Source of the DNA: Paragordius varius
Lineage: Eukaryota > Animalia > Nematomorpha
Reading direction: 5' to 3'
DNA: 64,000 nucleotides
NCBI GenBank assembly: GCA_964247055.1
Contig: OZ176052.1
Location: 6,386,001 to 6,450,000 of the forward strand
The notes below the pieces were generated by a model that was not told where the DNA came from, searched no databases, and saw only the letters and a program-made list of their open reading frames with translations. Positions 15,752-54,587 of this stretch are shown here, piece after piece; the stretch's first letter is position 1, and every line of letters begins with the position of its first letter. A program made the translations under genes and the position numbers.

Positions 15752-26854
<11,103 letters not shown>

Positions 26855-41100: not shown

Positions 41101-42535
41101 GTTTGGTTCATACAAATATTCTCAATGATATCAAATAATTTTATTTTTTTAGTTCGAGAATTGATTACTAAAAATAATTAATTTCACATGCTTTAAGGTA
41201 TGCAATTCAATATCTTGGTGATTTTTACTGCAGAATATTGATATATGAGTATCTGACGACATACAATATATATTTTTTTCATTTTTTTTCCCATTGAAAA
41301 CATACAAAAGATACATGTCTACATTGTAATAAAAATAAAATAGGGACACCTAATATCAGTACCAGGTAAAAATTATGTGTGTAAAAACCCCTTTCTTCTT
41401 ATCTTTATATAAAAGTCAAGTCATTTATATATATAGTTGATTATATATAATCAGATAACAGAAATACCATTATTATTGATTAAATATAAAACTATCCAAC
41501 CAACCAAACAACCTTTGCAAAAAATTTATTTAAGGTACACACATACAATGTGCGTGTGATCGATTGAGTGAAATTAGATCTGAAAAATATATATATTTCT
41601 AAGTATCAGAGACATATTTTAGAGTGTGTACAATTACTTACTATCTGTATAGTATCTATAATTTCAGTCGTAATTGAAATAGGGAAAGGCAGGTAAACAT
41701 ATTAATGTAACTATAATTTTAATTGGTTATCAGATTAAATTTTGATTTTTTTATCATACGCATACGGATCAAATATCAAAGTATGAAAGTCAGTTTGATC
41801 TGAAATTATAATTTAAATAATTCTTGAACATATTCATGCGTAATAAATACGGGATATTTTAGGACTCTCAACATTAAATCTGAGTTTCATTTTATCCTTA
41901 GAGATAATTATGATGAGAAAATTTTTCGATCGTTCTTGGTATGTAGGGGATGAAAGTATATTAAATCATAATTTAATTTTATATCTCTAATTTGAAAACC
42001 TTTTGTAAGAATATATATAAATCTCTTTGTGCTGAAAAAAATTATCTAATCTAAGAATGGTTATATTTTCATATTTTACTATATTTGACGTTTAAAATTT
42101 AGTATAATATTTATGAGATATAAACAGCAGTAAGGCTGTGAATTTTGAATAAATTATTACTAATTATCGCAAATATGTGCGAATTCAAATTAGATTCAAG
42201 GATAAAATATAATATATAAAGCATATAAGTTCCTAACTACGAAATAGCGGCAGTAATTATGATTTTAGTGTTATAGCTTGAAATTATTTAATTTTGATTT
42301 AATAAAGTTTTGAACGTCACCCCAAATGTCCTAATAGTTGGTGAATACTTAAATACTGATGTTAAATAATTGTGGGTTTTCAAATCGTATGGAGAATTAT
42401 CTAAAGCTAAAATAATATTACAGAAATGGAGGATTTTATTTTATAAGCATAGAAGTTATAAAACATAACTGTACGATTTAGTTTTTTCACCAATTTTTAT
42501 ATAAATGACTATAAAAGTACCTAATTTTTATATAG

Positions 42536-45500
42536 TATCATTTGCCCCAAATCTTGCTCAATACTCGGCACCTGTAGGGAATTACAACAATTACCACAAC
42601 AATCCTATCCGCCTTTTGGGTTCAGTTATACCCTTTTGGGTGCTTGAACCACAAGACACTTTTGTGGTTAAACAGAATCCGGCTACGTTAGAATGTGCCG
42701 CTAAAAATGCCCGAGATATCGTTTTCAAATGCAATGATGAGGATATGGCCAAATATCAATACCTGACTGAAACGTACCGAGACCCGCTAAGCAATGAAAT
42801 AATTCTGAAAACGGCCATAGACATTACCAGGGCTCAAGTCGAAGAATTTTATGGGCCAAACGGTTATCATTGTAGCTGTTTGGCTGTGGGCGGATCCTAT
42901 GATGAACCTAGCAAAACTATTAGTCGCTCAGCTTTGGTCCAAATTGCAAGTATATATATATGTTTAAAAATTTAACATCACGCATCATAATTTTAAAAAT
43001 AGTCTGATTAAAAAATAATCTTAGTTAGCATTTTAATGTTGGCTTATTCACCGATATAATTAATCGATTGACAACACAGTAGTGTATGATAAAAACAACA
43101 AAATATTGAATAAACAATATTCCTAACTTAAACATTACTTTGTTTATGCCAATTGACCAACTATGGTGAGAATAAGCCAGCATTAAAATGCTTAACTGTA
43201 ATATGAAATATGATATTTTGGTATATTGATTTGATCGATACATTGTTTCAATGTCGGCTTTTATAGACTATGGAGGAGTCTCTTGTACTTTAAAAATTAA
43301 CTGAAAATATTATTGTTTAATATACAGTGGCGTATGCAGTAAAAGATTGTTAGTGCAAAATAATCTTAATTAACACAAAACAGGGGGACAATTTTCATAT
43401 ATTAATTATCATTCAGTCCTATTTATAAACATATCCATAATATCCCCCTCATTAAGATTATTTTGCACTAACAATCTTTTACTGCATACGCCACTGTAAA
43501 AGGATAGAATACACAACATATTGTTTTATACAATTGTTATTTTATCTGTCTGTCTTGCGTATAGTTAGGCGCCTTAATCTCATGATAAATATCTTATTAA
43601 TTAATGCGTATATATGTATACCTTGCTACACATCATTTTTTTATTTTTATGTCGTCAGAAATCACAAAATGACAATACATAATTAAAACTAATTTTTAAA
43701 TGTATACCAAATCAAGATTGCTTAAACAGAAATAGCTTGTATACAAAGTTCGAACAAATTTAATTTATAATTCCTTTATATACTGGTGGTGTTTTTTAAC
43801 CATTAGGGGCACAAAAGGAGATTTAATCTGATGATTATCTTTATATTCCTATTTATCACAACACAACTAAACTTTGACTTTATATATTTTGACCACAATG
43901 GAAGAAAATAATTGAATAATTTGCTGAATTAATGTAAAAAAAAAGAACAAAGATATAAATAACTTTATCTATTGTATCTGCTCTCCCGCACTTTGCCCGT
44001 AAATTTTATCTCTACTCAAATCATTTTATCTACACATTGAATAAGTTAAATTGATAAAACAAACAACCTGTATAACAAAAAACGAATGATTAAAGATAAA
44101 ATTCATAAAACATGTACAATCGATATTTTGAACAAAATTTCCAAAACATTTGACCAATTTGTACTTTTAGCTATGACTAAAAGTTTAGTTAATATTAACA
44201 ATTCAGTCTACCTCTCTCAATCATCATTTATTATTCATCTCCAATCTCAGGAGAATTAGAAAAAAAAATATTCATTTTATAAGAACGCACATCCTGTGCA
44301 AATGACTAGTGTCCATAAATCATCTAAAATAAAAGTTGTGTATTTCCCTATCAATTCGTGCCATTTACCTAAATATTTTATTAGGACTCAATAAACAACA
44401 TAAAAATAAATTTAAGTATTGAATAATATTATATAAAATGATTATTATCAAATTGGTATATATTATCCATAGTCTTAAATTGTTTTACATATAAAAATCA
44501 ATAAGACACACAATTGGACTCGTATTTTATCAATGCACATCTCAATAGCTTGAAGAGTTTGTATTATATCTACATGTAAATTCTTTTATTAAACTTAACT
44601 TTTACAAGAAAAATCTCTTGGGATAAAAAAGAAATGTAATAAAAATGATTATGTATATAGGATTTACGCATATTAAATTACAATTTTGTGTTCACATCTT
44701 ATGTAGGTAAGATTAGTTTATTGTCTTACTAACTGGATTTTGTACTGCCATTTAAATAATTAATACCCGTGGAAATTATAGTAAAATCGTGGTTTTCCTC
44801 ACAAATTATCTTAAATTTGTGTAAAATATGGTCCTTGAAAATGCATTTTACTCTAATAAAACCGTTGATACATAAAATATTTAAACACCTCCCCTTAATA
44901 CATTTTTTATGGTTAGGTCTTAAAAAATATTTCGAAAAACAACCCGTGTCCATTTCCACGGAAGTCAACTCTACGGTTGAATTGCAATGCCTCCCACCCT
45001 ATGGATTACCGAAACCCGAAGTTTTTTGGATGAAAGATGGCATTCCCCTTGATGTAGATAAAGACCCTAACCTCATACTATCGAGTGAAGGAAGCTTACT
45101 CATTAGTATGGCCAGTTTGAGGGATCGTGGAAATTATAGTTGTGTCGCCAAGAATATTGCGAATCAACGCTCAACTGAACCTGCTTCTCTTAATGTTTAT
45201 GGTATTAATATTTTATAATTATTTTTACGTTTATGTGATATCATCCTTAAGTGTTTCAAATATTGTTTAATAATCAAGGTATAAATTGGTTTAAAGATAC
45301 AAGAATCTAAATAGTTTGAGTGGTTTTGCAATTCATTACGTAATGGAAGAAACAAAAACATATTGACACATATATGTGAAGCATTGAAAAATCTATATTA
45401 TTTCTTGTGTTACATAAGTAGGACTTCCGTCCTTTTGGTCACGGGAAACAATTTATTTTATCATAGAATGTAAATTTAGTAATCCTTTTAAATCGATATT

Positions 45501-48500
45501 AAAGTTACCTTAGATAAAATTACCGAATCAAACATCGGAAAAAAGATATTTTAAACGCTTGATTTGCAATAGATAATTTATATTTTTACGTAGCATAACA
45601 TTTATATGTTTAGTTGTTTTTTATAATTTGTCATCTTTCAGCAGGCTATTTGCTATTTTTCAAAAATCATGCTAAAAACTAATAAAATTAATTTATAACC
45701 ACCAATTAAAAATTATACCTATTAAAAAGTCAAATAGCATTAATACTAGACATTATGTCTTAAAACAAAATATATATTTTTGTTCTCAAAAGCATCGCAC
45801 ACACCTGTAGATATGATATTTAATATCAAAATTTTATGTGGTTGAGTTAACAGATTTTTAATAGCTTATACATCTACCTCCATATATCATTTGATTTTTA
45901 TACTTGGAATAATTTATAAAATATATAAATTTTCAGGTAAAATTATTTTAAAAAATATTAATATAAAATTTGTTTTATATATGTGTGTCGTCCGGTTATA
46001 AAAATATAATTAATTTTATTACATATTTATTTAACGAGCGTACCTCTTATTACCGCTTATCGTGTTGAAATATGATTCTTTGCGTTCGAAATGTTTCATA
46101 ATTAAATAAAAATTTGTGTTATGATTAAATATCTGGTTTTGATCTAATTATATATCTGGCTAATTTATAAATAATGTTGATTTAAAAATATTGTATTTCT
46201 GCCTGATTCACAATGTAATCATATATGTACAATGTAAAAAAAGTAAATTATTTATGTTTTTGTTTGAAAGGGAACAAACAATCTTGTTAGCCATGACAGA
46301 TATTGATTACGAGAGAATGGTTGTTTAAATTTTTTGCTTCTTTGAAAATTTATGTATGATATATATTTAGCATCATTTATATACATGCTAGTTTTAGCTA
46401 ACATATTTACACATATTTTATGAAGCATTTGAATCAAATAGTTTTTAAATAATAATATTAACCAGATAATTTTGTAATGATTTATAAAATACTATAAGTT
46501 AATCATTAAAATACAATCTATGTGGGTAAGCTTTAAAATATTACAATCTCATTAATTTTAATAAGATTTTACCGCCGGGATGATTAAAATATAAGACTGT
46601 ATTACAGTATAGTATCATCTAAAATCATTAATGATTGTAATTACTTAATTTAATATTATATCATTAATTTTTATTCTTTTTTGGGCAGACTAGATTTGAA
46701 AACATAACAATATATATTTTCTATAAGTATTTAACACAATTATATTTTTAACAAGAGTTGTGAAAAAGTTCTAAAACAATTTATAAATATTTTAGTTAAT
46801 GGCGGATGGTCGGATTGGACCGAATGGCCAAGCTGCATTGATAATTGTGAGAAGGGTTTTCGAAAACGATACCGTTTCTGCGCGAATCCGAAACCCATTA
46901 ATAATGGGCGAGATTGTTCGGGTCCCGCTGTCCAAAGAGAAAGCTGTGACATGTATTGCCCAGGTAAATTTTCTTGTATATGATAAAATGACTGTAAATG
47001 GTTAAACAAGTAATGAGCAATAATATTTTGTTGGTCGAGATGAATGGTTCCAAGAAACTTTATACAGTAAACAGCCAAATTATTGACTATAAGGGCCGTT
47101 TATTAATTGGTGATTAAAAATAAAACAAAAAAATGTATCAGAAATCACAGACTTTATTGTTTTGAAGTAAACAGGCTTATTCATTGGTAGATACTGATAC
47201 TGTTAATTGGTGAATATAGAAAATATAAGAAGAGAATACTAAAATAACCTTCTATTTTGATATTTCCGATGTTAAAATCTGTGAGAAGATCTCTATTTTT
47301 GTATAGTAAGATAGAGTTTATGACTTGTAAAGTTATGTACCTTACTTTCCCAAAGCTAATACGAATTATAAAAACTATGTATTAATCCAATCTACATGAT
47401 AAACACACGTTTGTTATAATTCTTTTAATAAATGTATAGTTAATGGAGGTTGGACCCAATGGTCCCTTTGGTCACAATGTAGTAAGGATTGTAAGGCTTA
47501 TCGAAGGCGTTCTTGCACGAATCCATCACCGTTAAATGGTGGTCGAGACTGTGGAGATTTAGATGGAAGTTTACCCTTTCAAATAGCAAACTGTAGCGGA
47601 GATTTCTGCGGTTCTGATAATGGACCTTTTCGCTTGCTTCTTACGAACGAGGGGGGAGACAATAGTATAATTTCCTCAGATTTTAATGATGAACATCTGA
47701 TTGATTTAATCAAGGGACAAATCGTCGATGATGGGGATACTAATATGGAAACAAACACAAACGCGATTGGTACACTTTATTAAATCTTAATATATTTTAT
47801 AAAACCGGGGATAAAAAGATGATAGGGGTTTCTGGCACAGTAAACTATAAATAGACAAAGTTATATTTTTTAAAGGGTATATTTTTTATTTTTTATTTTT
47901 AAGATCTTCCTGCCAATAAAACATTTTCTTAATATATATTGATGGCAAATTGTTTGGTATAAGGGAAAATATTTCACACTAAGAATCGTTTTAGACTGGT
48001 AAAAAATAGACATACTCAAAAAATTTTTAAGGATCTATTTTTTATAATTTATTCTGCTAAAAATAGTTTTTGATATTAATTTTTATTACATATGTAGAAA
48101 ATGATGAGAATTTTCATGGGCTCTCACCAGATTTTACAATTTCAACATTTGATCGAGCTGGAAACCATCGCATTAATTTACCCACACCTGATACAAACAA
48201 GCTTATTCTGTATATCGGCATTGCACTTTGTACCATAATTTTGATCATATGTCTCATATTTATCTTTGTCTATGCTTACAAAAAGTACAATGGGCGAAAG
48301 AATCGACAACATACCCAACCTTATGCATTTGATTATGAAGCTACGAGTAAATCTTATATCTAAAATATATTTTTTTAATTTGTCACGGTTAGTTAAACCA
48401 ATAATAAAAACAGTTTTTAATGCTTTAGTACCATATATAACTATATCTTTTAACGTTTTAGACACTTTTAGTCCATATATGAATGGTGCATCACACTTAC

Positions 48501-51452
48501 TTCTTGGTTTAGAACGTGAATTTAAAAAATTTCCACTGGACCACAAAAACATTGGGGATTTCTCTCCACATATATCTAACACATCTTCGGATACCAACGA
48601 TAAAGTAAGTACACCAAATCCTAAAAAAGATGCAAAGTATGGAAAACATAAAAATTATGGTAAAAATGGAAAATGGTATGATTCCTACCATTATGAAAGC
48701 ATTAATACACTGAACACAAAAAAGGATGAGAAGGATAAGACTCTGAACTCTATTGAATCTGGAATAGGTACCGTATTAATTTTTAAAACACTTTTATTCG
48801 TTGAATTTAACCATCTAATTTGTTTAGACTGTACTAAGAAATTTAATTATTTTATGTATAGGATCATCAGCATACAATGATTCTCGTAAATGTAGCAGTA
48901 GTATGTATTCAAAACGTGACCCTAAAGCAATTATGTTGCCCGGGAAAGCAAAAAGTCAAGCCTCCGATTTGGCCCAAGAACAGATTGATAAATTAGAAAA
49001 GTTTCTGCTAATGAATCAAGCGACAGTGTTTAGAAACCCCAGCCCTGTTTTTTCTCAAGATTCCCCAAATATGTCTTCCTATCGTGCTGATAACCAAAAT
49101 GAAAAGCGTCAATTTTCCGAGAATTATTATTCGGCTCAACCAAACTTTTGTTGTAACAATAATGTAAACAATCAATTGACAACATCGAATATTGCTTATA
49201 CGACCAAAAATTTAGATTTATGTCAAACATCTTCAACGACATATTATGCATCCGTTCCTTTAACCAACAATACTTATTGTAATGACACAAATCTGAATTA
49301 TATACCGTCATCTGAATGTAATGATTGCCAAACTCATGATCATTGCACCATAAGTCATAATATTAATAATTACAAATGTAACAATGATTGTGTACAAACA
49401 CAAGTTTGTGACTGGATTGACCACAAAGGATCCACTCTACGCCTAGATAATTTTGGTAAGTTATGCTAAGTATATTTTTATACTTAAAAAACAAATATTT
49501 TAGGATTTTAGTGTCTAAATTAGTCTCTATTCGCTATTCGCTATAAAAGTTAATCAAAGTAAAAGAATATTAAATTACGTCAATAATATTTTGCACCAAA
49601 CGGTACCATATATATAGTCCACGTTAAACTAAATTAAACCTAAAAAAATCCATAAAATTAAGTTTTTTCCATATTATATATATATTAATTAGTTCAAATA
49701 GATTTCTAGCTATTCATCAACCAGCCAACATATATAAAATAATTTTTTAGGCATTACAGCAATGATACCCAGTGATTGTTTTGAAAACTCCAAAGACCCT
49801 ATACATGTAGTCTTATCCTGTTCGCCTTGCGCCAACGTTAATGAATATGTCCAATCATTTTTGCCTTCAATCACTACGTCTTTAACTCCAATTACTACCA
49901 TTAGAATTCACAATGATACAAAAACTAATTTTTACTTTAAAAAACCGATGGTTTTAACATTTAATCTCGATTCTGCAAGCATTTGTGATCCAAACCCAAA
50001 ACAATCTATCAAAATCTTGCATGCAAATCCCGATACAAAGGATTGGAGGGTAAGAAATTTTTTTACCTTTTGTTCTATCTATTTGATACTTGTAAATTTA
50101 CATTTGATATTTTTTTGGAAAAACTATTACTTATATATCAATTGTTTCAAATATATTTTAAAAAATTAAATATACTTTAGCCTTATTATAATATATTTTG
50201 ATCTTAGGTGTTGGCTACTTTGGGAGAAGAAACTATCGATACTCCAATATATTGTCACCTTAATTACGATGCAACTACAGACCAGTATCAATTTCACGTT
50301 TTGACAGAAATGACTGGAAATTATTGTGTTGTGAAAACTGAACAAAATTCATCCCACTCATCCTCAGCACAACATCAACAACATTGTAGTGTTCAAACCA
50401 ACTTTTCACATTATAAAACACTAGAGAATAAGGTATGAATATATCATTGATTTTTTCGAAAATCACTTATAACTTTGATTTCTTGCATATAATGTTTATT
50501 TTAGATATTGGTTAACTGATAATTTTCTTTATAAATATCTTAAACCGTGCCATATATTTATATGATTATTTTTATTTTATGTAGCCCAATGACGCTGAAT
50601 GGACAGCACTAAATGGTACAACCCCAAAAAAATGTGATGACAACAAAATGAGGTAAAACACCGATTTAATTTTATTATTTGCATAAGTTTCTTTTTTATA
50701 TTCAAAATTATTTCAAATATGTTGCAGAAACTTCCGAAAAATCTTAAAAGAAATTTGTCCCTTGCTTGATAAACCGAGGGCAGACGGAAAAGACTGGAGA
50801 TTATTGGCAAAGCATCTAAAGATCGATAGGTTCGATTAATTTTGATTTAATAATAATTGTTATAGAAAATATTACAATTTATTAATTGGTTTTAATGGAG
50901 AGTTTTTGAACTAGGATTCTAATTTTTTTTACATTGGCAATATTAAACCTCTTTTTTATTATTATTATTATGTATATTTATAAATTATAAATGTATAATT
51001 TTTCGGATTTTTGAAGAATAATAACAAAATATTTTTTTATAACACTTAGTAGAACCGGAACAATTAGCTTTTTTGGAATGAAAAACAAGACCGTTTTTAA
51101 CAATTTGGTTGAAATATAAAAGCTATTTTTATTTCTCAAAAAAAATGCACAAATGATTGCTTTTATCTATTTTGATCATATATTAACGTTGTATCATATT
51201 AACTAGAAAATTATAACCACTTGAATAAAAACCATTTAATAAATATATACCTATTCTAGATACATTCAATACTTTGCTGCTCGACCAAGTCCAACCGATA
51301 CTCTTTTAACGTTGTGGGAATCATTAAATCGAAATCAGACCACAACTTTAACAGATGAGCTTCAAAGCTCAACATTTGATCAATTAAAAACAATTTTGAG
51401 CAAAATGGATCGCAATGATGTTTGCCTGATTATGGAAAATTACATTGAATAA
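42536..51452 (+). CDS. unc-5: UNC-5 netrin receptor; exons about 42536-42949, 44917-45201, 46796-46963, 47440-47769, 48098-48346, 48462-48767, 48862-49455, 49751-50049, 50208-50432, 50585-50652, 50728-50829, 51260-51452 (at least about 1077 aa; signal-peptide exon not located)
   Basis: Ig1 (EPQDTFVVKQNPATLEC...ITRAQVEEFYG); Ig2 (LQCLPPYGLPKPEVFW...NYSCVAKNIA); TSP1 VNGGWSDWTEW and VNGGWTQWSLWSQC; TM LILYIGIALCTIILIICLIFIFVYA; ZU5 (GITAMIP...LGEETIDTPIYC); death domain (LDKPRADGKDWRLLAKHLKIDRYIQYFAARPSPTDTLLTLWE). All phases are consistent; the first acceptor is uncertain. Confidence 0.93.
43325..43496. mobile_element. 172-bp MITE with perfect 46-bp TIRs and TA target duplication (Tc1/mariner-type), in an unc-5 intron
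   Basis: CAGTGGCGTATGCAGTAAAAGATTGTTAGTGCAAAATAATCTTAAT (43325-43370) is exactly inverted at 43451-43496; flanked by TA/TA. Confidence 0.9.
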
Positions 51453-51851
51453 AATTACATGCCTTGTGTCTATTCATATGTGTGATTGGAGTAAAAATAT
51501 TAAACTAATCTGGAGCAAAATCGAGACACTCCGGAAAGTCTTCCAGACCAAAACATATTTTTTATAGTAAAATGTACATAAATTACAACAAAATTGCATT
51601 TTATTTATTTACATTTTTATAAAACGCATTATTATACATTTTATGCATTTAACACTCAATGATATTCGAGAAACGTGAATTTGAGTTACTTTATGGCAAT
51701 TTATATTATAAATATTAAATATCATACTGATTGATTGTATTTTATATGTGATGAGATACAATAAATATTGAAACCATATTTACCCATAAAATTTTGAATT
51801 TTAACATAATGAATGATATTGCAACGCAATGGATATATCGATTAAGCGCAC

Positions 51852-53012
51852 CTATATACCTATTCGATTCTTTATTGTCGGCACATTTCTAGGAAATTTG
51901 TAAGGGTATTTTTGCATTATGTAAATCCACAATGCGCAATAAACTGTTAATGACCACAGCTTAATAATATTGTGTGTCTTGTTAAACCCAGACATTTCAT
52001 CATAGTATATGATCATCCCTTTGTCCACGAAAGAAAATGTTTTGATTATAAAGTCAGTAATGAATATGGGATAATATCCGGCGGTGAAAATTAAAAAAAA
52101 TTTAATATAATTTTCATTTGAAATACTCAAACTGCCCTCCGGGTGATGATTAGGTATAGTCATAAATCTTGCACGTCTTTTTCGTCTCCAAACTTTTAAC
52201 GGTGATTTGCAAAAACTTAAGACTTTACGAACCTTTGTTTTAGGGCGCCTCGTATTGTTGAATCGTACACTATTACCCGCTGATTGTTGAATTGTGAATA
52301 AAGTATCTTCCAAAAATGAGGTAACCGATCGATCTGGCACCATATTAATGTGATGATGGTGGACCTTGTTTCGAGACGAAATACAAAGTTGACGTATCAT
52401 CATACACATTATCCAAGTCAGCGTTAACAAGGGTATCCCATTAAGGATTATTAGACGCAAAGAAATCATGATAACCATGTTAGAATTATCCGTCTTTATA
52501 CTAAGTCTATAAGCCCTAGTTCCTTGACTCACATCCACTAACCGTTCATGTAAATTAAACAGCATAAGATTATGGATATGCAGGAAAAGACACGTTATCA
52601 ATGTTCCAAGCTTGATCCATCTAATTTGTCGAGACTTGTAACTTATGTTAAGGTAAACGTAATCCATCGTCTGAGACATAACCTCAAACCCTACCATGAG
52701 ATTCAAAACGAGGTATGTCGAATACAACGATGGTGATATCCAATGCCTCCACCGTGAGAAGCATTGAACATAGGCATACGAGTATATGAAATTTGCTTTT
52801 TGATAGAGACCAATCACCTCAATTACTGGATGGTAGAATGTTATAATTTGTAATATGTTAAGGTAATCCATCCTCATCCACAAGAATATGACATCATTAA
52901 TTTGGTGTCGCGAAAGACGAATTATCAGGGCGGCAACCGTTATGAAGGTTAGTGTCAGGATGATTGGATAGATAAAAAAATAAAATATTTTATCAAATGT
53001 ATCAAAAATCAT
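51852..53012 (-). CDS. Intronless divergent 7TM (GPCR-like, possibly chemoreceptor) protein, 386 aa, paralog B
   Basis: Long clean ORF in AT-rich DNA; seven hydrophobic segments; TM5 LNGIP, TM6 GYYP, long basic ICL3; no DRY or NPxxY motif; paralogous to 53478-54587. Confidence 0.8.
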   Translation of the reverse strand: MIFDTFDKIFYFFIYPIILTLTFITVAALIIRLSRHQINDVIFLWMRMDYLNILQIITFYHPVIEVIGLYQKANFIYSYAYVQCFSRWRHWISPSLYSTYLVLNLMVGFEVMSQTMDYVYLNISYKSRQIRWIKLGTLITCLFLHIHNLMLFNLHERLVDVSQGTRAYRLSIKTDNSNMVIMISLRLIILNGIPLLTLTWIMCMMIRQLCISSRNKVHHHHINMVPDRSVTSFLEDTLFTIQQSAGNSVRFNNTRRPKTKVRKVLSFCKSPLKVWRRKRRARFMTIPNHHPEGSLSISNENYIKFFLIFTAGYYPIFITDFIIKTFSFVDKGMIIYYDEMSGFNKTHNIIKLWSLTVYCALWIYIMQKYPYKFPRNVPTIKNRIGI

Positions 53013-53477: not shown

Positions 53478-54587
53478 TTAATTATCGCGGTTGGGAAACT
53501 TGCATTTAAAGATTTTTAGTAAAATAAGCCACAGACTGCAATATACCGTTAAAGACCAAAGTCGGCACAAATTATTAATTTTGTTAAATAGAAGATTTTC
53601 ATCGTAGTATACGCTAATGGATTGTGTATAAAATGTAAATATATTAACTGCAATATCCGCTATGTAAAGGGGGTAATATCCAACCGTGTAAAAACAAAAT
53701 ATTTTAATATGATCATTATTGTCAAAACTAGCGTTCCTTTCGTTGCCTATGAGAAAGCGTTGTAATATTTCAAAAATTGTCATTTTTTTTCGAATATAGT
53801 TGACCTCTGGAGTATTTGGTGTTAATGTTTTATTCAACGCATTTTTATTTTCAATTCTAACACCCTTATCGTTAAGTTTGGTTAAGGTTATTTCAGATGT
53901 CGTAGGAATTTGAGTGGCATGATTGGTTGTTAAAACCATGCCTCGTCTCGTTTTATGTTTGAGAATGGCATTTTTTATCAAGAAAAATGTTACTATGGTG
54001 AGTGAAAGAAAGGGTATAATATTAAGTATCATAATTCTTAAACTATACATGACGATAAAATTGGTAGATACAATATCAATGTTTAAACGATATCCCTTGG
54101 GAACTTTTGATAAATCTTTTACCCGTCCCTTGATATCAAAGAAAATTACATTATGTATATAAAACAATAGTACAAGGATAAATGTGAACACTTTTATAAG
54201 TGAGATGAATCGTGCATTAGATGTAATATGAAAATAGTCATAATCCAAATTTTGTGACATAACTTGGAAACCAATCATGAGATTTATAAGGAGATATGAG
54301 GCATTTAGAGCCGGAGTAAGCCAGTGTCTCCATCGAGTAAAATATTGTAGGTATCGGATGTCTCGAATATAAGGGGCATCAAAATATAAACTTACAATTT
54401 CCACGATTGAATGGGAAAACGCAATAATTTGAAGGACATTCAAATAATCCATTTTTATCCAAAGAAAAAAGTTATCATTTATGCTAACACGTGATAACTT
54501 AATTATCAAATATATAAGAGTGATTAACAATATTACAAGCGCAAATGGATAAAATATGATGTAAAAAAAGAAATCCAAGTTTTGCAT
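53478..54587 (-). CDS. Intronless divergent 7TM (GPCR-like, possibly chemoreceptor) protein, 369 aa, paralog A
   Basis: Same topology; shared motifs with paralog B: FLWxxMDYLN, RWRHW, MSQxxDY, LRxxILNxIP, GYYP, LWSLTVYC. Confidence 0.8.
   Translation of the reverse strand: MQNLDFFFYIIFYPFALVILLITLIYLIIKLSRVSINDNFFLWIKMDYLNVLQIIAFSHSIVEIVSLYFDAPYIRDIRYLQYFTRWRHWLTPALNASYLLINLMIGFQVMSQNLDYDYFHITSNARFISLIKVFTFILVLLFYIHNVIFFDIKGRVKDLSKVPKGYRLNIDIVSTNFIVMYSLRIMILNIIPFLSLTIVTFFLIKNAILKHKTRRGMVLTTNHATQIPTTSEITLTKLNDKGVRIENKNALNKTLTPNTPEVNYIRKKMTIFEILQRFLIGNERNASFDNNDHIKIFCFYTVGYYPLYIADIAVNIFTFYTQSISVYYDENLLFNKINNLCRLWSLTVYCSLWLILLKIFKCKFPNRDN

What the first reader, a model, noticed from the sequence alone, without database searches (positions are those of the whole stretch)
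50208..50829. UNC-5 apparently lacking the UPA domain
After the ZU5 C-terminal strand (TGNYCVV), only about 60 low-complexity residues precede the death domain. The intervening introns (152 and 75 nt) are too short to hide the roughly 140-150-aa UPA domain, and the exon phases close without it. In known UNC-5 proteins, ZU5-UPA-DD forms an autoinhibited supramodule and UPA carries the DCC-binding region, so its loss predicts altered netrin repulsion or death-domain signalling.
Basis: partly seen in the sequence, partly recalled or inferred. Interest (0 to 1): 0.72.

Follow-up and report, generated by a model that had tools for sequence, protein, structure and literature searches.

The report
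Horsehair-worm UNC-5 without UPA domain
This is an intact netrin-receptor (UNC-5) gene of a horsehair-worm-like animal in which the middle one of the three usual intracellular signalling domains (UPA) has been replaced by a short floppy linker. The only available relative, Gordionus, has the same loss, so it is a natural "delta-UPA" receptor; it is a modest curiosity, not a new kind of system.

Summary
A 12-exon UNC-5 gene lies on the + strand at about 42.5-51.45 kb, with Unc5 N-terminal Ig, I-set Ig, two TSP1 repeats, a TM segment, ZU5 and a death domain. The last ZU5 strands are in exon C (50208-50333) and the death domain starts in exon E (50728). Only about 55 low-complexity residues separate them, across introns of 152 and 75 nt.

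No UPA signal was found by any test:
- Pfam on all local ORFs.
- A UPA profile built here, run against all 2,791 six-frame pieces of the window (best E 0.64, outside the gene).
- A ZU5-UPA-DD profile, of which about 180 states (168-347) are unmatched.

The closest relative is the RefSeq UNC5C-like protein of the horsehair worm Gordionus (86% identity in Ig2). It also has ZU5 and Death, no UPA, and an 83-aa linker that AlphaFold2 predicts to be disordered. About 30 other full-length UNC5s carry UPA (arthropods, tardigrade, octopus, vertebrates, cestode), and a paper draws UPA in C. elegans UNC-5.

The loss is therefore real and lineage-wide, at least across the two nematomorphs available. The functional consequences are inferred only. 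The ZU5 N-terminal part is too diverged to confirm by sequence. This is a new variant of a known receptor, of moderate interest.

The parts
42505..42949 (+). Exon with the UNC-5 N-terminal Ig domain. The 5' limit is uncertain: the ORF opens with ATG at 42505, no clear signal peptide is seen, and an upstream exon may exist.
   Evidence: Pfam PF25609 Unc5_NetrinR_N at 3.3e-26. 44% identity to Gordionus P0009 32-131. Donor GT at 42950.
44917..45201 (+). Exon with the second Ig domain (I-set).
   Evidence: Pfam I-set at 1.1e-12. 86% identity to Gordionus P0009 188-281. AG at 44915-16 and GT at 45202-03.
46796..46963 (+). Exon with the first thrombospondin type 1 repeat.
   Evidence: Pfam TSP_1 at 1.3e-9. 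60% identity to Gordionus 278-337.
47440..47769 (+). Exon with the second thrombospondin type 1 repeat and an acidic stalk.
   Evidence: Pfam TSP1_spondin at 3e-4, below the curated cut-off. 54% identity to Gordionus 336-390. The donor at 47770 is my reading.
48098..48346 (+). Exon with the transmembrane segment, a hydrophobic run of about 23 residues followed by basic residues.
   Evidence: Direct reading of the translation. Splice sites.
48462..48767 (+). Juxtamembrane cytoplasmic exon, with a Tyr-containing block conserved between the two nematomorph proteins.
   Evidence: 45% identity to Gordionus 476-533. No Pfam hit.
48862..49455 (+). Long low-complexity cytoplasmic exon. It has a conserved block at 48942-49103, and its last ~16 codons are the presumed first ZU5 strand.
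   Evidence: 41% identity to Gordionus 568-621. No Pfam hit. The ZU5 start is inferred from position only.
49751..50049 (+). Exon B: the presumed N-terminal and central part of ZU5, strongly diverged.
   Evidence: A 143-codon open frame in 26% GC DNA, with GT-AG sites in matching phase. Only a weak collinear match to ZU5 profile states 68-97 (E 4.3 over 2,791 pieces). Shuffle p 0.005-0.47.
50208..50333 (+). Exon C, first part: the C-terminal strands of ZU5.
   Evidence: Canonical UNC5 profile states 127-167 at E 1.2e-6. ZU5 profile at E 2e-7. Gordionus 969-1002. 0 of 2,000 shuffles reach the score. PDB 3g5b 110-142.
50334..50432 (+). Exon C, second part: low-complexity linker that stands where UPA begins in other UNC5 proteins.
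   Evidence: No Pfam or profile match. A second haplotype in run X1 differs by a net 3-nt in-frame deletion at 50418-50421.
50585..50652 (+). Exon D: a 68-nt mini-exon encoding 22 linker residues.
   Evidence: GT-AG sites and phases close. No family match.
50728..50829 (+). Exon E: the pre-death-domain helix and the first part of the death domain.
   Evidence: Pfam Death positions 2-28 at E 9.5e-4. Profile states 348-380 at E 1.4e-10. 52% identity to Gordionus 1088-1120.
51260..51452 (+). Exon F: the rest of the death domain and the stop codon.
   Evidence: Pfam Death positions 32-85 at 25.4 bits, above the 22.6 cut-off. Profile states 378-429 at E 6e-13.

Best explanation
The locus is the intact UNC-5 (repulsive netrin receptor) orthologue of a nematomorph-like animal. 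The ZU5-UPA-DD cytoplasmic supramodule has lost its middle domain.

What is shown:
- The ectodomain (Ig-Ig-TSP1-TSP1), the TM segment, a conserved juxtamembrane block, the C-terminal ZU5 strands and a complete death domain are all retained.
- About 180 profile positions, covering UPA and its flanks, are replaced by about 55 low-complexity residues.
- The Gordionus orthologue has the same architecture, with an 83-residue linker predicted to be disordered.

What is inferred:
1. The loss happened once, in the nematomorph stem or at least before the split of these two species. It happened after the split from nematodes, because C. elegans UNC-5 has UPA.
2. The receptor still works, presumably through its juxtamembrane tyrosine block, ZU5 and the death domain.
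3. ZU5 can still clamp the death domain intramolecularly, with the floppy linker acting as a tether.
4. Functions that map to UPA in other animals are absent or done differently. These are the DB motif that binds the P1 motif of DCC/UNC-40, the UNC-40-independent signalling that needs the ZU5-to-DD region in C. elegans, and LRP6/VEGFR2 coupling in vertebrates. Any UNC-5/DCC cooperation would then have to run through netrin-bridged ectodomains.

The confidence given applies to the shown part plus inferences 1 and 2. Inferences 3 and 4 are weaker, at about 0.4 each.
For: - UNC-5 identity: Pfam hits, and collinear tblastn matches of about 25 canonical UNC5 proteins to every ectodomain exon, the ZU5 end and the DD.
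- UPA absence at this locus: no Pfam hit in any + strand ORF of 40 aa or more between 48.0 and 51.6 kb. My UPA HMM has a best E of 0.64 in 2,791 six-frame pieces, outside the gene. Supramodule profile states 168-347 are unmatched, while 127-167 and 348-429 match at E 1e-6 to 6e-13.
- Spacing from ZU5 end to DD start is 187-230 aa in canonical UNC5 proteins, about 55 aa here and about 86 aa in Gordionus.
- Gordionus orthologue: Pfam finds ZU5 at 847-924 and Death at 1092-1183, and no UPA. All three isoforms share that tail. The alignment shows a clean UPA-sized gap.
- AlphaFold2 on the Gordionus region gives pLDDT above 90 for ZU5 and DD, and below 50 for linker residues 188-248.
- The model superposes on UNC5B 3g5b with ZU5 and DD together: Z 25.2, 252 residues, rmsd 4.0 Å, model 15-358 against chain 541-942. 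ZU5 alone gives Z about 13.7 and DD alone 10.9.
- All other full-length UNC5 proteins sampled carry UPA at E below 1e-22.
- C. elegans UNC-5A is described as ZU5-UPA-DEATH (PMC10464613).
- UPA roles in other animals: PMC8897508 and PMC5123080; the DB-P1 interaction as cited in PMC10464613.
- Gene intactness: every exon is open, the phases close, total length is 3,261 nt or 1,087 codons, and the one polymorphic indel seen in exon C is in frame.
Against: - There is no transcript evidence. All runs that hold the locus look like genomic DNA, and the one putative RNA run laid (X6) has nothing. The splice pattern is therefore a model.
- The N-terminal part of ZU5 in this species is not demonstrably ZU5 by sequence. 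The whole cytoplasmic module may be degenerating, not just remodelled.
- The closed ZU5-DD arrangement comes from an AlphaFold2 model of the Gordionus protein, not this one, and could echo the 3g5b crystal structure in the training data.
- 'Lineage-wide' rests on two species only.
- That the window comes from a nematomorph is inferred from the closest relative and from an earlier scan note. It was not tested independently.
- Whether a second, UPA-bearing unc-5 paralogue exists elsewhere in the genome is unknown.
Confidence: 0.8

Rival explanations
1. UPA is encoded, but in exons that the model misses. These could be alternative exons, a distant or trans-spliced exon, or a UPA so diverged that it escapes detection. 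On this view the UPA-less protein is only one isoform or an artefact of modelling.
For: There are no RNA data to confirm the junctions. ZU5 exon B shows that domains in this species can diverge beyond profile detection.
Against: - The two introns between the ZU5 end and the DD are 152 and 75 nt, and cannot hold about 400 nt of coding sequence.
- The 430-nt intron lies inside the DD.
- Six-frame searches of the whole 64 kb with a UPA HMM find nothing.
- The RefSeq models of Gordionus, three isoforms, all lack it too.
- The linker of about 55 aa is physically too short for a UPA fold of about 135 aa.
Confidence: 0.06
2. The gene is a decaying relic (pseudogene or near-pseudogene) in a lineage with heavy gene loss. 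On this view the missing UPA and the unrecognisable ZU5 N-part are steps of degeneration and not a working variant.
For: The ZU5 N-part is undetectable. There are long low-complexity cytoplasmic stretches. No expression evidence exists.
Against: - All 12 exons are open, with canonical splice sites and closing phases.
- Ig2 is 86% identical and TSP1 60% identical to Gordionus, and the juxtamembrane block, ZU5 end and DD are conserved.
- DD exon F alone passes Pfam's cut-off.
- The indel polymorphism in exon C is in frame.
- Netrin genes are noted elsewhere in the genome by earlier readers (untested).
Confidence: 0.08
3. An assembly artefact: a collapsed or deleted segment removed the UPA exons from this assembly.
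For: Run X3 has no contigs over 50240-50680. The tool warns that such holes prove nothing.
Against: - Contigs of run X1 cover 50093-51121 without a joint, and X5 covers 50261-50422 with no differences.
- There is no N run and no odd junction in the sequence.
- The independent Gordionus assembly gives the same architecture.
Confidence: 0.02

Closest known systems
Canonical UNC-5 / UNC5A-D netrin receptors (C. elegans UNC-5, Drosophila Unc-5, vertebrate UNC5A-D)
   Same: Ig (Unc5 N-terminal type), I-set Ig, two TSP1 repeats, a single TM segment, ZU5 and a C-terminal death domain, in the same order. The DD start motif and the ZU5 end motif are conserved.
   Different: There is no UPA domain. About 55 disordered-looking residues stand where other UNC5 proteins have 187-230. 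The ZU5 N-part is strongly diverged, and the juxtamembrane region is long and low-complexity.
Gordionus sp. m RMFG-2023 'netrin receptor UNC5C-like' (XP_065320069-71; P0009, P0151, P0152)
   Same: It is the closest relative found and has the same UPA-less ZU5-linker-DD tail. It shares nematomorph-specific cytoplasmic blocks with this gene.
   Different: Its linker is longer (83 against about 55 aa) and unrelated in sequence. Its ZU5 is still recognised by Pfam at 2.7e-16. It has extra inserts between Ig1 and Ig2 and in the cytoplasmic region.
UNC5B cytoplasmic supramodule, PDB 3g5b (Wang et al. 2009, as cited in PMC8897508 and PMC10084454)
   Same: The ZU5 and DD folds match. In the AlphaFold2 model of the Gordionus orthologue the two domains superpose on 3g5b together (Z 25.2, 252 aa, rmsd 4.0 Å).
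   Different: In 3g5b, ZU5 binds both UPA and DD. Here the UPA arm is missing, so only a two-domain clamp is possible.
Engineered Unc5B delta-UPA constructs (PMC8897508, PMC5123080) and the C. elegans UNC-5B short isoform (PMC10464613)
   Same: These are also receptors without UPA.
   Different: Those are laboratory deletions or a truncated isoform that also lacks DD and most of ZU5. Here the loss is germline, precise, and keeps the DD.

Membership tests
UNC-5 netrin receptor family | N-terminal Unc5-type Ig domain followed by an I-set Ig domain | tested here: met
   Pfam PF25609 at 3.3e-26 and PF07679 at 1.1e-12.
UNC-5 netrin receptor family | Two thrombospondin type 1 repeats | tested here: met
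   The first gives TSP_1 at 1.3e-9. The second is below Pfam's cut-off (TSP1_spondin 3e-4), but is 54% identical to the second TSP1 of Gordionus with the Cys/Trp pattern kept.
UNC-5 netrin receptor family | Single transmembrane segment between the TSP1 repeats and the cytoplasmic domains | tested here: met
   A hydrophobic run of about 23 residues followed by a basic stop-transfer stretch in exon 48098-48346, read directly. No TM predictor was run.
UNC-5 netrin receptor family | Cytoplasmic ZU5 domain | tested here: inconclusive
The C-terminal strands are significant (E 1e-6 to 2e-7). The N-terminal two thirds (exon B) are not significant on their own.
UNC-5 netrin receptor family | UPA domain between ZU5 and DD (Pfam PF17217), carrying the DCC-binding DB motif | tested here: not met
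   No Pfam hit. No hit with my own UPA HMM in six frames. Profile states 168-347 are unmatched. Only about 55 residues are available.
UNC-5 netrin receptor family | C-terminal death domain | tested here: met
   Pfam Death positions 2-28 on exon E and 32-85 on exon F, the latter at 25.4-27.1 bits against a cut-off of 22.6.
UNC-5 netrin receptor family | Binds netrin and mediates repulsion | not testable with these tools
   Earlier scan notes report netrin genes elsewhere in this genome. I did not check them.
ZU5-UPA-DD supramodule proteins (UNC5, ankyrins, PIDD) | Three-domain closed supramodule in which ZU5 contacts both UPA and DD | tested here: not met
   UPA is absent. Only a ZU5-DD contact is predicted, and that for the Gordionus orthologue.

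The most novel reading that the evidence does not exclude
Nematomorph UNC-5 is a functional, naturally UPA-less netrin receptor. It keeps a two-domain ZU5-DD autoinhibitory clamp joined by a disordered tether. If so, the UPA arm, and with it the cytoplasmic DB-P1 link to DCC/UNC-40 and UPA-dependent effector recruitment, is dispensable for UNC-5 function in a whole animal phylum.
Probability: 0.4. Interest if true: 0.5.

Novelty: new variant of a known kind. Interest (0 to 1): 0.38.

Why it matters
Reviews describe the UNC5 cytoplasmic region as an invariant ZU5-UPA-DD unit (PMC10084454). UPA has several roles in other animals:
- It is the effector-exposing arm in vertebrate Unc5B signalling (PMC8897508, PMC5123080).
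- It holds the DCC-binding motif.
- The ZU5-to-DD region is required for UNC-40-independent function in C. elegans (Killeen et al. 2002, cited in PMC10464613).

A lineage that removed exactly this domain but kept ZU5 and DD is a natural deletion experiment. It can show which UNC-5 outputs need UPA, and whether ZU5 alone can gate the death domain.

The finding also adds a domain-level example to the gene loss known in horsehair worms. It does not reveal a new mechanism or family, and a public RefSeq protein already shows the same architecture without comment.

Tried and rejected
1. Transcript evidence. The look-up of sequencing runs found no RNA holder. Read laying on X1, X3, X5 and X6 gave unspliced genomic-type contigs and no splice joints, and X6 was empty. 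The junctions therefore could not be tested.
2. PDB sequence search with exon B gave no hit.
3. The look-up of encoding contigs for the Gordionus protein found no record. The Gordionus introns could therefore not be scanned for UPA relics, and synteny could not be checked.
4. I tried to confirm the taxon with the neighbouring intronless 7TM ORF. It has no homologues and no Pfam family. The taxon rests on the UNC5 relative and an earlier scan note.
5. Scan-note look-ups for DCC, frazzled, neogenin and UNC-40 returned nothing. A blank there says nothing about absence.
6. I considered that Gordionus residues 1036-1090 might be a UPA remnant, because they align to profile states 295-347. I rejected this: those states are the variable UPA-DD linker and the alignment has no conserved columns.
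7. All searches were made exon by exon, by reference.
Full report
**What is there**

The window is AT-rich eukaryotic DNA, 22-35% GC. On the + strand between about 42.5 and 51.45 kb lies a multi-exon gene. Its open pieces give these Pfam hits:
- Unc5_NetrinR_N at 3.3e-26.
- I-set at 1.1e-12.
- TSP_1 at 1.3e-9, and a weaker second TSP1.
- Death, split over the last two exons: positions 2-28 and 32-85 of 86.

A hydrophobic TM segment sits in the exon at 48098-48346. I read the splice sites directly. That gives 12 exons with GT-AG introns whose phases close, 3,261 coding nt in all. The 5' end, including any signal peptide, is unresolved.

**Check of the observation**

- Exon C (50208-50432) starts with the last ZU5 strands and runs on into S/Q/N/H-rich sequence.
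- A 152-nt intron follows, then the 68-nt exon D and a 75-nt intron.
- Exon E (50728-50829) starts the death domain.
- A 430-nt intron lies inside the DD, and exon F ends with a stop at 51450-52.

I built a profile from the cytoplasmic regions of 22 canonical UNC5 proteins (435 states). It aligns as follows:
- Exon C to states 127-167, E 1.2e-6.
- Exon E to states 348-380, E 1.4e-10.
- Exon F to states 378-429, E 6e-13.
- No piece of the window matches states 168-347.

About 55 residues occupy that interval.

**Search for a hidden UPA**

- Pfam at E up to 10 finds no UPA on the + strand ORFs of 40 aa or more that I scanned between 48.0 and 51.6 kb, intron read-throughs included.
- I built a UPA HMM from eight Pfam-delimited UPA domains. 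It detects UPA at E below 1e-22 in every canonical full-length UNC5 I had.
- The same HMM gives a best E of 0.64, on the other strand at 27 kb, among all 2,791 six-frame pieces of 15 aa or more in the window.
- tblastn of about 25 full-length UNC5 proteins against the window shows the same pattern each time: ectodomain exons, ZU5 end and DD are hit, and the 187-230 residues between ZU5 end and DD start find nothing.

**Relatives**

I searched the 1.84-billion-protein library with phmmer, using the Ig1 exon as query. Eight multi-repeat Ig proteins scored higher. The closest UNC5-type hit is P0009, which one search identifies as XP_065320070.1, netrin receptor UNC5C-like, of the horsehair worm Gordionus sp. 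m RMFG-2023.

- It is 86% identical in Ig2, 60% in TSP1-1 and 38-52% in the DD.
- It shares two cytoplasmic blocks that no other protein matches.
- An earlier scan note also calls this genome a horsehair worm.
- Pfam finds ZU5 (847-924, 2.7e-16) and Death (1092-1183) in it, but no UPA.
- 83 low-complexity residues separate the ZU5 end from the pre-DD helix, and all three RefSeq isoforms share that tail.
- In a 23-sequence alignment the Gordionus row has a clean gap over the UPA block.

A word search with the Gordionus ZU5-DD region returned seven other UNC5 proteins: tardigrade, octopus, bird, bats and a cestode. All carry precomputed PF17217. C. elegans UNC-5A is drawn with ZU5, UPA and DEATH domains (PMC10464613).

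The most economical reading is one loss, after nematomorphs split from nematodes and before these two species split.

**Structure (Gordionus proxy)**

I ran AlphaFold2 on Gordionus residues 826-1194, with the alignment above.
- Overall confidence: pTM 0.77.
- ZU5 and DD have pLDDT above 90.
- Linker residues 188-248 have pLDDT below 50.

The model matches UNC5B 3g5b best: Foldseek E 9e-15, and VIA-align Z 25.2 over 252 residues at 4.0 Å, spanning model 15-358 and chain 541-942. ZU5-only structures give Z about 13.7 and DD-only 10.9. So ZU5 and DD are placed relative to each other much as in the closed UNC5B crystal form. This is a prediction on the relative, and may reflect training memory.

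**Weak points**

1. No RNA. The runs that contain this DNA are genomic in behaviour, with contigs running through introns and no joints at splice sites. The putative RNA run laid (X6) is empty.
2. The N-terminal two thirds of ZU5 (exon B, 49751-50049) is not significantly ZU5-like on its own.
   - Pfam and PDB give nothing.
   - The profile gives E 4.3, with a collinear match to states 68-97.
   - Smith-Waterman shuffles give p 0.08 against Gordionus, 0.005 against one arthropod, and not significant against two others.
   - Its assignment rests on position, length, open frame and phase.
4. Paralogues and DCC/UNC-40 could not be looked for in this genome.

**Mechanism proposed**

Shown: the architecture is Ig-Ig-TSP1-TSP1-TM, juxtamembrane block, ZU5 (at least its end), a linker of about 55 aa, and DD.

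Inferred:
- The receptor is functional. Its frames are intact, it is conserved with Gordionus, and the indel polymorphism in exon C is in frame.
- It signals through the conserved juxtamembrane tyrosine-containing block, ZU5 and DD.
- It may keep a ZU5-DD clamp.
- It lacks whatever UPA does elsewhere: DB-P1 binding to DCC/UNC-40 (cited in PMC10464613), UNC-40-independent output of the ZU5-DD interval in C. elegans (title of Killeen et al. 2002, cited there), and LRP6 or VEGFR2 coupling in vertebrates (PMC8897508, PMC5123080).

**Novelty**

Full-text searches found no paper linking Nematomorpha with netrin, and none describing a natural UPA-less UNC5. The Gordionus RefSeq entry shows the same architecture, but it is simply labelled UNC5C-like.

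This is a new variant of a well-known receptor in a little-studied, loss-prone phylum. It is useful as a natural deletion, but not a new kind of system.

Noticed in passing
P0001-P0008, P0043, P0048, P0052, P0072 (library proteins, not in the window): The best-scoring library hits to the UNC5 Ig1 exon are not UNC5 proteins. They are proteins of 650-1800 aa built of four or five tandem pairs of (Unc5-type N-terminal Ig + I-set Ig), without ZU5, UPA or DD. Examples are an uncharacterised protein of the gastropod Babylonia areolata and a 'sax-3-like' protein of the hemichordate Glandiceps talaboti.
   Followed up: no
window 51855-53012 (-) and 53481-54587 (-): Two intronless ORFs of 386 and 369 aa lie just downstream of unc-5. 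Neither has a Pfam family. A word search with the first ORF (the only one searched) found no homologues.
   Followed up: partly
window 49751-50049: The ZU5 N-terminal part of this species is far more diverged than that of Gordionus. Pfam gives ZU5 at 2.7e-16 in Gordionus and nothing here. The ZU5 end and the DD stay conserved, so constraint inside one domain is uneven.
   Followed up: partly
P0152 (Gordionus isoform X3): This isoform skips exactly the first TSP1 repeat (56 aa). It parallels the single-TSP1 forms known from vertebrate UNC5A (the vertebrate comparison is from my own knowledge).
   Followed up: no
window 47300-51700, runs X1, X3, X5: The locus is highly polymorphic. Run X1 carries two haplotypes, with many SNPs and intron indels. 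Run X3 is about 5% diverged. Run X5 is filed under a different organism label but holds near-identical DNA at very low depth, which could mean a host, contamination or a mislabelled sample.
   Followed up: no
window 15752-21245 (-): Four ORFs of 232-437 aa lie in the GC-richer stretch. They are probably the LINE element that earlier readers mention inside the PAP intron. I did not examine them.
   Followed up: no
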